A stretch of 63,200 nucleotides of DNA, filler included, from Octopus bimaculoides (GCF_001194135.2; 6 parts of 5 records of this genome joined end to end with filler, not necessarily neighbours in it), one strand, 5' to 3'; shown: positions 9,848-10,222, numbered from the whole stretch's first letter. Made by a program: numbers and translations. Notes: generated by a model from the letters alone, not told the origin.

Positions 9848-10222
9848 AATACTTCATTTAGAGAATTAACATTGCTTGTTTTCACCTTTTCAATATCAGT
9901 GAAGAATTTCACTGGAAAAGAAGATATAAGTTTGCCAGGTTTTTGTCTCTCTCACCATGGTCAGCAGCTGTCGGACGCCGACGAAGGGAAATAACCCTGA
10001 AATCCGGATACGTTCGTGCTGCAGATCGAGGTGAGAGGGATAACTTCCCTTGGCAAACAGGACACAGTCGTGTGTCGATAAGCCAGCTGGAGGAGATGTC
10101 CTCCTGGGGCTAAAAGCAACAGTAACATCCACCCCTAGGGGTCAGCCACACTTAAGTGGCAATATACTACACTTTATCGTGCAGTTACTGTTAATACTTC
10201 ATTTAGAGAATTAACATTGCTT
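9848..10222 (+). mobile_element. 345-nt highly structured retrozyme/PLE-terminal-repeat-like unit with 30-nt terminal redundancy
   Basis: AATACTTCATTTAGAGAATTAACATTGCTT occurs at 9848-9877 and 10193-10222. The unit carries an internal hammerhead motif and many hairpins, and is flanked by (TA)n. Confidence 0.6.
9973..10015 (+). ncRNA. Type I hammerhead ribozyme motif (U4C variant)
   Basis: GGACG-CCGACGA-AGGG(AAATAA)CCCT-GAA-ATCCGGAT-A-CGTTC. Helix I is GGACG/CGTTC, helix II is AGGG/CCCT, helix III is palindromic, and the cleavage triplet is AUA. Confidence 0.7.

What the first reader, a model, noticed from the sequence alone, without database searches (positions are those of the whole stretch)
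9848..10222. Retrozyme-like 345-nt unit: hammerhead at the tip of a long helix, terminal redundancy, inserted in (TA)n
Seen: a 30-nt exact direct repeat sets a 345-nt period, and the upstream gap (9471-9847, 377 N) is about one unit long, so a collapsed tandem copy is plausible. A type I hammerhead (9973-10015) has its helix I extended by GCAGC/GCTGC, GGTC/GATC, TCTCTCTCACC/GGTGAGAGGGA and GTTTGCCAGG/CTTGGCAAAC (9930-10058). The rest of the unit is also paired: GACAC/GTGTC, GGAGGA/TCCTCC, CCCCTAGGGG, GCCAC/GTGGC and AACAGTAAC/GTTACTGTT. Known: metazoan non-LTR retrozymes are short, non-coding, highly structured tandem units with type I hammerheads that yield circular RNAs and are thought to be mobilised by Penelope-like elements. 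Inference: this is a cephalopod retrozyme or PLE-terminal-repeat family that could produce a ~345-nt circular RNA. The core has U4C, so this copy may be weak.
Basis: partly seen in the sequence, partly recalled or inferred. Interest (0 to 1): 0.85.

Follow-up and report, generated by a model that had tools for sequence, protein, structure and literature searches.

The report
Octopus hammerhead-bearing retrozyme-like repeat
A 345-base non-coding repeat in an octopus genome looks like a small mobile element that copies itself through self-cutting RNA circles, a kind already known in mussels, corals and salamanders, but its self-cutting core carries a weakening change that a second genomic copy shares.

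Summary
The sequence features are real. A 30-nt exact direct repeat (9848-9877 = 10193-10222) sets a 345-nt unit. The right end abuts (TA)9, and (TA)n lies left of the gap. The unit folds far better than shuffles (z = -7.5). At 9972-10016 it carries a three-way junction with the published "canonical" metazoan type I hammerhead layout: helix I 6 bp, helix II 4 bp with a 6-nt loop, and helix III 2 bp capped by palindromic CCGG.

My descriptor finds this site only in the whole window; about 0.002 such hits are expected per unit.

Against it: no Rfam hammerhead model matches, even at E<=10. A model built from four published retrozyme hammerheads ranks it first, but only at E~0.15. The core reads CCGACGA (C4, plus A10.1-U11.1). 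An Octopus bimaculoides gene model (A0A0L8G4E9) has exonised a second copy, antisense, with 47/50 residues identical. Its Arg codon shows C4 there too, so the change is not private to this copy.

No PLE ORF lies nearby. Tandem status is hidden by the gap.

Best reading: a cephalopod non-LTR retrozyme or PLE-dependent repeat, probably weak or fossil. It is a new member of a known kind.

The parts
9848..10192 (+). One 345-nt repeat unit: non-coding, GC 45%, highly structured
   Evidence: Period set by the exact direct repeat. Fold z = -7.46. Circular fold -128.3 kcal/mol with 64% of bases paired. Six-frame translations have no protein relatives except one exonised copy.
9848..9877 (+). First copy of the 30-nt terminal direct repeat; it begins at the first base after the gap
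   Evidence: 100% identical to 10193-10222.
10193..10222 (+). Second copy of the 30-nt repeat: a head-to-tail overrun (start of a next unit, or a PLE-type 'tail'), ending directly at (TA)9
   Evidence: PLE insertions carry a 30-40 bp tail at one end (PMC8557442).
9930..10058 (+). Long imperfect hairpin whose tip is the hammerhead-like junction; it extends helix I
   Evidence: Present in the linear and circular minimum-free-energy folds. 34 of the 45 nt upstream of helix I pair with the region downstream, against 0-13 in four published retrozymes.
9972..10016 (+). Type I hammerhead-like motif. Helix I: 9972-9977/10011-10016. Core CCGACGA: 9978-9984 (C4 = 9979). Helix II AGGG/CCCU: 9985-9988/9995-9998, with loop AAAUAA. 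GAA: 9999-10001. Helix III A-U, U-A with palindromic CCGG: 10002-10009. H17 = A10010, with predicted cleavage 3' of it.
   Evidence: Only descriptor hit in the window. Chance expectation. Top hit of model R1 at 12.1 bits, E~0.15, full length with all pairs standard. No Rfam hammerhead match.
9969..9971 (+). UGU, which with U10017 forms an asymmetric internal loop 6 bp from the core; candidate 'loop 1' partner of loop 2
   Evidence: Folds. Position agrees with the published 6 bp/4 bp geometry (PMC4209133). The interaction itself is inferred.
10059..10192 (+). 3' branched domain of short hairpins, closed by AACAGTAAC/GTTACTGTT
9462..9470 (.). (TA)n at the left edge of the gap (left flank of the presumed insertion)
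9471..9847 (.). Assembly gap of 377 N. It hides the 5' boundary: either a further unit or unassembled (TA)n
10223..10239 (.). (TA)9 directly abutting the 3' end of the element, followed by a (TATG/CATA)n microsatellite

Best explanation
The 345-nt unit is a copy of a non-coding, hammerhead-bearing retroelement of the metazoan non-LTR retrozyme type, inserted into a (TA)n microsatellite of an octopus genome.

Proposed life cycle (inferred from the family, not shown here):
1. The + strand is transcribed.
2. The type I hammerhead at the tip of the long helix cuts 3' of A10010. In oligomeric transcripts it most likely acts as a double hammerhead through the palindromic AUCCGGAU helix III.
3. The 345-nt monomers are circularised by the host tRNA ligase.
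4. A Penelope-like element's reverse transcriptase and GIY-YIG nickase copy them into (TA)n targets. Reading round the circle, or resolution by the nickase, leaves a head-to-tail overrun. Here that is the 30-nt terminal redundancy.

Shown here: the unit, the redundancy, the (TA)n flanks, the strong fold, the canonical 6/4/2-bp hammerhead geometry, and a second copy in Octopus bimaculoides.

Inferred: transcription, cleavage, circularisation and PLE dependence.

Both visible copies carry C4 and A10.1. C4 also strengthens a competing CCG/CGG pairing. So the ribozyme in this lineage is probably weak or dead, and this locus is most likely a fossil or low-activity copy.
For: - The 30-nt exact repeat at a 345-nt spacing shows a head-to-tail junction.
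- The right end abuts (TA)9 and the left gap edge is (TA)n. PLEs prefer (TA)n and leave 30-40 bp tails and partial tandems that break short-read assemblies (PMC8557442).
- Fold z = -7.46. Size, GC (0.45), energy per nt (-0.37) and fraction paired (0.64) lie within or close to the range of four published retrozymes.
- The hammerhead geometry equals the published canonical metazoan type I: helix I 6 bp, helix II 4 bp, helix III 1-2 bp with a palindromic 2-4 nt loop (PMC4209133). That type is tied to retrozymes rather than to autonomous PLEs (supplement of PMC7229834).
- It is the only descriptor hit in the window, with a chance expectation of 0.0018 per unit, or 0.0002 for the canonical geometry.
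- It is the best hit of a model built only from coral, mussel and axolotl retrozyme hammerheads.
- AUCCGGAU self-pairs (-10.9 kcal/mol), and two copies of the region fold better together than apart (-54.7 vs 2 x -24.5).
- A second copy exists in O. bimaculoides, 47/50 residues identical over 150 nt. Its three inferred differences fall at H17 (A to C, allowed), a helix I G.U (to A-U) and loop 1.
- A natural U4C hammerhead still supports viroid infectivity (PMC3088659).
Against: - No Rfam hammerhead family matches at gathering score, nor at E<=10 on 413-nt or 73-nt stretches.
- My own model gives only 12.1 bits, E~0.15.
- The core departs from CUGANGA at U4, an otherwise invariant position, and has A-U at 10.1/11.1. 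Both departures are shared by the second copy, so no copy with a canonical core has been seen.
- The hammerhead fold is 7.8 kcal/mol less stable than the local minimum-free-energy fold.
- Only 1.09 units are visible, there is no other copy in the window, and only one other copy was found anywhere.
- Genome-wide, a one-mismatch descriptor would hit by chance thousands of times (rate).
- No PLE ORF is in the neighbourhood.
- The helix I extension is much longer than in published retrozymes.
Confidence: 0.6

Rival explanations
1. The unit is not an independent retrozyme. It is a solo pseudo-LTR, or a heavily 5'-truncated 3' end, of an autonomous Penelope-like element, left in a (TA)n target with the usual 30-40 bp tail.
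For: PLE insertions are often strongly 5'-truncated, form partial tandems, carry hammerheads in their pLTRs, prefer (TA)n and have a 30-40 bp tail (PMC8557442). In Xenopus, retrozyme consensus sequences are sister to PLE pLTRs (bioRxiv 10.64898/2026.07.22.740005). The 30-nt overrun and the (TA)n flanks are present here.
Against: No RT or GIY-YIG ORF adjoins the unit. The only RT remnant lies more than 2 kb upstream on the other strand, beyond two gaps, and by its motifs looks LINE-type. The hammerhead has the canonical 6/4/2 geometry that the literature ties to retrozymes, whereas metazoan PLE pLTRs carry 'minimal' variants with helix II of 7-8 bp and no helix III (PMC4209133; supplement of PMC7229834). 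Six-frame translation of the unit shows no PLE coding remnant.
Confidence: 0.15
2. The hammerhead resemblance is coincidental. The unit is an unrelated structured interspersed repeat, such as a hairpin-bearing SINE-like element or a source of small RNAs, whose long inverted repeat supplies 'helix I' for free.
For: Rfam finds no hammerhead. The own-model E-value is not significant. An invariant core base is wrong in both known copies. The hairpin is far longer than in known retrozymes. At 2.7 hits per Mb, a one-mismatch descriptor yields thousands of chance hits in a genome of gigabase size.
Against: Even without requiring helix I, the rest of the motif occurs at only 2.6-4.6e-5 per position, and it sits exactly at the hairpin tip. 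It also has the specific 6/4/2 geometry, a 6-nt loop 2, an internal loop 6 bp from the core and a perfectly palindromic helix III; none of 20 Mb of random sequence matched on all of these. The element has direct terminal redundancy, not inverted termini, and it shows PLE-type insertion features.
Confidence: 0.15
3. The 30-nt terminal redundancy, and therefore the '345-nt unit', is a product of short-read assembly next to a gap and not a feature of the genome.
For: The first copy starts at the very first base after the gap. The same window holds exact 171-nt and 132-nt duplications that begin or end at gap edges, so this assembly does create gap-adjacent duplicates. PLE insertions are known to upset short-read assemblies.
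Against: The two copies of the 30-mer sit in different, non-trivial contexts: one is followed by GTTTTCACC, the other is preceded by GTTACTGTT and followed by (TA)9. A simple haplotype duplicate or an unmerged overlap would give neither context. A repeat that starts at the contig end is exactly what a tandem array cut by a gap would show.
Confidence: 0.1

Closest known systems
Metazoan non-LTR retrozymes (Cervera & de la Pena 2020, PMC7229834), e.g. Mytilus Mg353, Acropora Amil224, axolotl Ax330/Ax353
   Same: Short non-coding unit (170-400 nt; here 345), GC below 50%, compact highly paired RNA, and a type I hammerhead. Helix I is 6 bp, helix II 4 bp, and helix III 2 bp capped by a palindromic tetraloop, as in axolotl HHR_Amex2, which also has a non-G-C pair at 10.1/11.1 and cleaves after GUA.
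   Different: No sequence similarity outside the ribozyme. The core has C4 instead of U4. The helix I extension is much longer: 34 of 45 nt paired against 0-13. Tandem arrays, expression and circles are not shown. No cephalopod example was found in the open literature searched.
Penelope-like element pseudo-LTRs and insertion footprints (Craig et al. 2021, PMC8557442; Cervera & de la Pena 2014, PMC4209133)
   Same: (TA)n target, partial head-to-tail arrangement, a 30-40 bp 'tail', a hammerhead in the repeat, and a tendency to break short-read assemblies.
   Different: No RT/GIY-YIG ORF is attached. The hammerhead is of the canonical type, not the minimal PLE type with a long helix II and no helix III.
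Amphibian satellite 2 and Schistosoma Sm-alpha hammerhead repeats
   Same: Tandem units of about 330 nt with type I hammerheads. Their weak, palindromic helix III makes them act as dimers. From my own recollection, not checked with a tool here, Sm-alpha has a 4-bp helix II with an A-rich 6-nt loop and a 6-bp helix I followed by an asymmetric internal loop, as here.
   Different: Those families have a canonical CUGANGA core and proven cleavage and transcripts.
Natural U4C hammerhead variant of a viroid (Ambros & Flores 1998, as cited in PMC3088659)
   Same: The same core substitution. Reported to be much slower in vitro yet sufficient in vivo.
   Different: A plant viroid hammerhead rather than an animal genomic repeat. 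I could not read the primary paper.

Membership tests
Hammerhead ribozyme, type I (canonical metazoan form) | Conserved core CUGANGA ... GAAA ... UH | tested here: not met
   The core reads CCGACGA / GAAA / U-A: 10 of 11 fixed positions match, with C at position 4. The second octopus copy has an Arg codon over 9978-9980, which forces C at position 4 there too. GAAAY and RUH are satisfied.
Hammerhead ribozyme, type I (canonical metazoan form) | Three-way junction with helix I open and helices II and III capped | tested here: met
   Descriptor hit with helix I 6 bp, helix II 4 bp and helix III 2 bp. All pairs are standard in the model alignment. This fold scores -16.7 kcal/mol against -24.5 for the local minimum-free-energy fold.
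Hammerhead ribozyme, type I (canonical metazoan form) | Helix I 6 bp, helix II 4 bp, helix III 1-2 bp with a palindromic 2-4 nt loop (PMC4209133) | tested here: met
   CGGACG/CGUUCG; AGGG/CCCU with loop AAAUAA; AU/AU with loop CCGG. AUCCGGAU is a perfect 8-nt palindrome.
Hammerhead ribozyme, type I (canonical metazoan form) | Match to the Rfam hammerhead covariance models | tested here: not met
   No hammerhead family at gathering score, nor at E<=10 on 9848-10260 or 9958-10030.
Hammerhead ribozyme, type I (canonical metazoan form) | Similarity to proven retrozyme hammerheads under a sequence-plus-structure model | tested here: inconclusive
   Model R1 was built from 4 published sequences. The candidate is the top hit in the window and the only full-length one among the four alignments shown, but scores only 12.1 bits, E~0.15.
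Hammerhead ribozyme, type I (canonical metazoan form) | Site-specific self-cleavage | not testable with these tools
   Needs in vitro transcription of monomer and dimer.
Non-LTR retrozyme | Head-to-tail tandem repeats (at least a dimer) of a 150-450 bp unit | tested here: inconclusive
   1.09 units are visible and the 377-N gap hides the upstream side. No other copy is in the window.
Non-LTR retrozyme | Non-coding, GC below about 50% | tested here: met
   GC 0.452. The longest ORF is 78 aa. There are no protein relatives except an exonised copy.
Non-LTR retrozyme | Compact, highly base-paired RNA | tested here: met
   z = -7.46. 64% paired as a circle and -0.37 kcal/mol per nt, within or close to the range of four published retrozymes.
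Non-LTR retrozyme | Multicopy family in the genome | tested here: inconclusive
   One further copy was inferred, from the O. bimaculoides gene model A0A0L8G4E9. The octopus genome itself is not searchable with these tools. Scans of viral, prokaryotic-genome and metagenome contigs found nothing.
Non-LTR retrozyme | Expressed as linear and circular RNA of unit length | not testable with these tools
   No RNA-seq access.
Penelope-like element insertion / pLTR | Repeat flanks an ORF with RT and a GIY-YIG endonuclease | tested here: not met
   No such ORF lies next to the unit. The only RVT_1 remnant (E = 1.3e-14) is at about 6400-7700 on the minus strand and has LINE-type motifs. Only selected frames were scanned against Pfam.
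Penelope-like element insertion / pLTR | Insertion into a microsatellite, typically (TA)n | tested here: met
   (TA)9 abuts the 3' end and (TA)n lies at the left gap edge. A given boundary has about a 0.2% chance of abutting a (TA)>=4 run exactly (35 runs in 19.8 kb).
Penelope-like element insertion / pLTR | 30-40 bp 'tail' extension at one end | tested here: inconclusive
   The 30-nt overrun has the right size (PMC8557442). It cannot be told apart from the end of a longer tandem array hidden by the gap.

The most novel reading that the evidence does not exclude
The C4 (CCGANGA) core is the family's working state. That would make this a natural U4C hammerhead in an animal retrozyme, still cleaving as a dimer through the AUCCGGAU palindrome. 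The 'unit + 30-nt overrun in (TA)n' would then be a direct Penelope-type integration footprint on a retrozyme. If so, it would be the first cephalopod circular-RNA retrozyme and would give sequence-level evidence that PLE machinery mobilises retrozymes. The unusually long helix I hairpin might also make the RNA a substrate for octopus dsRNA pathways such as editing or small-RNA production.
Probability: 0.15. Interest if true: 0.6.

Novelty: new member of a known kind. Interest (0 to 1): 0.4.

Why it matters
Hammerhead retrozymes are known from cnidarians, bivalves, insects and lower vertebrates, and a 2026 preprint argues they derive from Penelope-like elements. The open literature searched here reports none for cephalopods.

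A cephalopod family would extend that distribution. If many copies show the same (TA)n target and 30-40 nt overrun, that would be a direct integration footprint linking retrozymes to PLE machinery.

The shared C4 core is a small natural experiment on how much hammerhead activity such elements need.

Practically, the locus shows how these repeats break short-read assemblies. A copy can also be exonised into a gene model: the N-terminus of the anion-exchanger model A0A0L8G4E9 is built from a SINE head plus the antisense of this repeat.

Tried and rejected
- Rfam scans found no hammerhead: the whole piece at gathering score, and 413-nt and 73-nt stretches at E<=10. Only microsatellite-driven miRNA look-alikes and a hairpin-driven MIR1446 hit at E = 8.6 appeared.
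- Searches for further copies:
  - blastn of the unit against the window found none.
  - An exact 22-base pattern around helix II found nothing in viral, prokaryotic-genome or metagenome contigs.
  - Back-translated searches of metagenome and genome contigs found nothing.
  - The 81-aa open frame against 5.8 billion proteins found nothing.
  - Five further frames joined into one query gave one hit only, P0001.
  - HMMER against 1.84 billion representatives found nothing.
- Attempts to fetch other assemblies of this locus, or of the second copy, by exact-protein look-up were all not on record.
- MITE reading rejected: the termini are direct repeats, not inverted.
- Composite-SINE reading rejected: the SINE heads in the window (20501-20569, 4235-4300) share nothing with the unit.
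- No homology to published retrozymes outside the ribozyme.
Selected frames given as letters returned only an RVT_1 remnant.
- The supplements of the two PLE papers and the Ambros & Flores paper are not held. The octopus genome paper could not be read to check the assembler's k-mer size.
- I first argued that the contig starting exactly at the 30-mer favours 'monomer + tail'. I dropped this, because a tandem array cut by a gap gives the same picture by construction.

Full report
**What is in the sequence**

Bases 9848-9877 and 10193-10222 are identical over 30 nt, 345 nt apart. Apart from two gap-hugging duplications at 5137-6030, this is the only complex exact repeat of 18 nt or more in the piece. 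The first copy begins at the first base after a 377-N gap (9471-9847). The second ends directly against (TA)9 at 10222-10239. The left edge of the gap is also (TA)n.

TA runs are frequent here: 35 runs of four or more units in 19.8 kb, and six of nine gaps touch one. So the left flank and the gap length say little. The exact abutment of the right boundary has a chance of about 0.2%.

**Structure**

The 345-nt unit folds at -133.7 kcal/mol against -89.9 +/- 5.9 for dinucleotide shuffles (z = -7.46). The minus strand gives z = -6.2.

As a circle the RNA folds at -128.3 kcal/mol with 64% of bases paired and GC 0.45. Size, GC and energy per nt fall within the range of four published retrozymes, and the fraction paired lies just below their 0.66-0.71.

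One difference stands out. The stem that continues helix I is very long. Of the 45 nt upstream of helix I, 34 pair with the downstream side, against 0-13 in the coral, mussel and axolotl elements.

**The hammerhead-like motif (9972-10016)**

- Helix I is CGGACG/CGUUCG (6 bp).
- The core is CCGACGA.
- Helix II is AGGG/CCCU (4 bp) with loop AAAUAA.
- GAA follows, then helix III: A-U and U-A capped by CCGG.
- H17 is A10010.

This is the 'canonical' metazoan type I layout described by Cervera & de la Pena: helix I 6 bp, helix II 4 bp, and helix III 1-2 bp with a palindromic 2-4 nt loop (PMC4209133). The supplement of their 2020 paper ties that layout to retrozymes rather than to autonomous PLEs. 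An asymmetric internal loop (UGU/U) sits 6 bp from the core, where loop 1 is expected.

AUCCGGAU is a perfect palindrome with a self-duplex energy of -10.9 kcal/mol. Two copies of the region fold better together than apart. This fits the dimeric mode described for weak-helix-III hammerheads.

**Is it more than chance?**

A type I descriptor allowing one core mismatch hits only this site on both strands of the window. In 20 Mb of Markov sequence the rate is 2.7 per Mb.

| Requirement | Expected hits |
|---|---|
| One core mismatch allowed | 0.0018 per unit, about 0.1 per window |
| Plus helix I >=6, II >=4, III >=2 bp | 0.0002 per unit |
| Plus palindromic helix III | none in 20 Mb |

The same rate implies thousands of chance hits across a genome of gigabase size. 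The motif alone would therefore not be convincing. Its position at the tip of the hairpin of a repeat unit is what carries weight.

**Evidence against a working hammerhead**

- No Rfam hammerhead family matches at gathering score, nor at E<=10 on short stretches.
- A covariance model built only from the coral, mussel and two axolotl retrozyme hammerheads ranks the site first in the window. It aligns end to end with all pairs standard, but scores only 12.1 bits, E~0.15.
- Position 4 is C, and pair 10.1/11.1 is A-U rather than G-C.
- The hammerhead fold is 7.8 kcal/mol above the local minimum. In that minimum C3-C4-G5 pair with C10005-G10007, and C4 strengthens this competing pairing relative to U4.

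**A second copy**

Five of the unit's reading frames joined into one query gave a single hit among 5.8 billion proteins. It is the Octopus bimaculoides 'anion exchange protein' model A0A0L8G4E9.

- Residues 24-73 are the antisense translation of 10109-9960, with 47 of 50 identical.
- Residues 1-23 match tRNA-derived SINE heads that also occur in this window.
- The match ends where the minus strand reads ATG|GTGAGA, a plausible cryptic splice donor (inference).

So the window is probably from O. bimaculoides or a close relative, and the family has at least two copies.

The codon over 9978-9980 is Arg in that copy. Every Arg codon has G in the middle, so position 4 is C there too. A Leu codon likewise fixes A at 10.1. 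The three amino-acid differences map to H17 (A to C, allowed), G9974 (G.U to A-U in helix I, if U10014 is unchanged) and loop 1. These are compatible with a hammerhead but too few to be evidence for one.

C4 is therefore a lineage feature, not a private lesion. U4C is a known natural variant that cuts poorly in vitro yet suffices for a viroid in vivo (PMC3088659).

**Insertion footprint**

Craig et al. describe four features of PLE insertions: a bias for (TA)n, partial head-to-tail copies, a 30-40 bp 'tail' at one end, and trouble for short-read assemblies. All four fit this locus. A 2026 preprint finds that vertebrate retrozymes are sister to PLE pLTRs, with unit lengths averaging 313-342 bp in the invertebrates sampled and many monomeric copies.

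I cannot tell 'monomer plus 30-nt tail' from 'tandem array cut by the gap'. A repeat that starts at the contig end follows from the second case by construction.

An assembly artefact is less likely. The two 30-mers sit in different, non-trivial contexts. Still, the same window contains 171-nt and 132-nt exact duplicates at gap edges, so caution is due.

**Neighbourhood**

No RT/GIY-YIG ORF adjoins the unit. A frameshifted RVT_1 remnant (E = 1.3e-14) at about 6400-7700 on the minus strand has LINE-type motifs. A mariner-like remnant at about 10800-11500 on the minus strand was recognised only by eye. Nothing suggests that the unit is the UTR of an autonomous element here.

**Verdict**

The retrozyme or PLE-repeat interpretation is the best-supported one (about 0.6). 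It remains unproven for tandemness, copy number, expression and catalysis, and the visible copies carry a non-canonical core.

The open literature I could search has no cephalopod hammerhead or retrozyme report. I therefore rate it a new member of a known kind, of moderate interest.

Noticed in passing
window 5137-6030: Exact duplications that begin or end at gap edges, with (TA)n between them: 5137-5307 = 5620-5790 (171 nt, spacing 483) and 5402-5533 = 5899-6030 (132 nt, spacing 497). This looks like a false tandem duplication from haplotype or scaffolding effects, or a real ~490-bp duplication around a TA microsatellite.
   Followed up: partly
P0001 (UniRef A0A0L8G4E9_OCTBM) residues 1-74; window 9960-10109 (-) and 20501-20569 (+): The N-terminus of an Octopus bimaculoides anion-exchanger gene model is built from a tRNA-derived SINE head (aa 1-23) plus the antisense of this repeat (aa 24-73). 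It ends at a GTGAGA cryptic donor. This is either an exonisation or an annotation artefact.
   Followed up: partly
window 14905-14978 (+): A tRNA-like sequence: ARAGORN calls tRNA-Thr (GGT), and Rfam tRNA scores 32.9 bits, just above gathering. SINE-like sequence follows at about 15050-15160. It is probably a tRNA-derived SINE head or a pseudogene.
   Followed up: no
window 20501-20569 (+) and 4235-4300 (-): tRNA-derived SINE heads (ATGGCCCAGTGGTTAGGGCAG...) that match the first 23 residues of P0001.
   Followed up: no
window ~6400-7700 (-): A frameshifted, stop-ridden reverse transcriptase remnant (Pfam RVT_1, E = 1.3e-14) with LINE-type motifs (FRPGRS, AAFDKV, HYADG). It is not a Penelope-like element.
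   Followed up: partly
window ~10800-11500 (-): A decayed mariner-like transposase remnant (motif ILHDDNAPS), seen by eye in the translations but not recognised by Pfam at E<=0.1.
   Followed up: partly
whole piece 1-22710: (TA)n is very dense: 35 runs of four or more units in 19.8 kb. Six of the nine assembly gaps have a TA repeat at an edge, so gaps here mostly mark microsatellites.
   Followed up: yes
window 9978-9980 with 10005-10007: In the minimum-free-energy fold, core bases C3-C4-G5 pair with CGG of the helix III loop. The C4 substitution turns a U.G into a C-G in this inactive alternative.
   Followed up: partly
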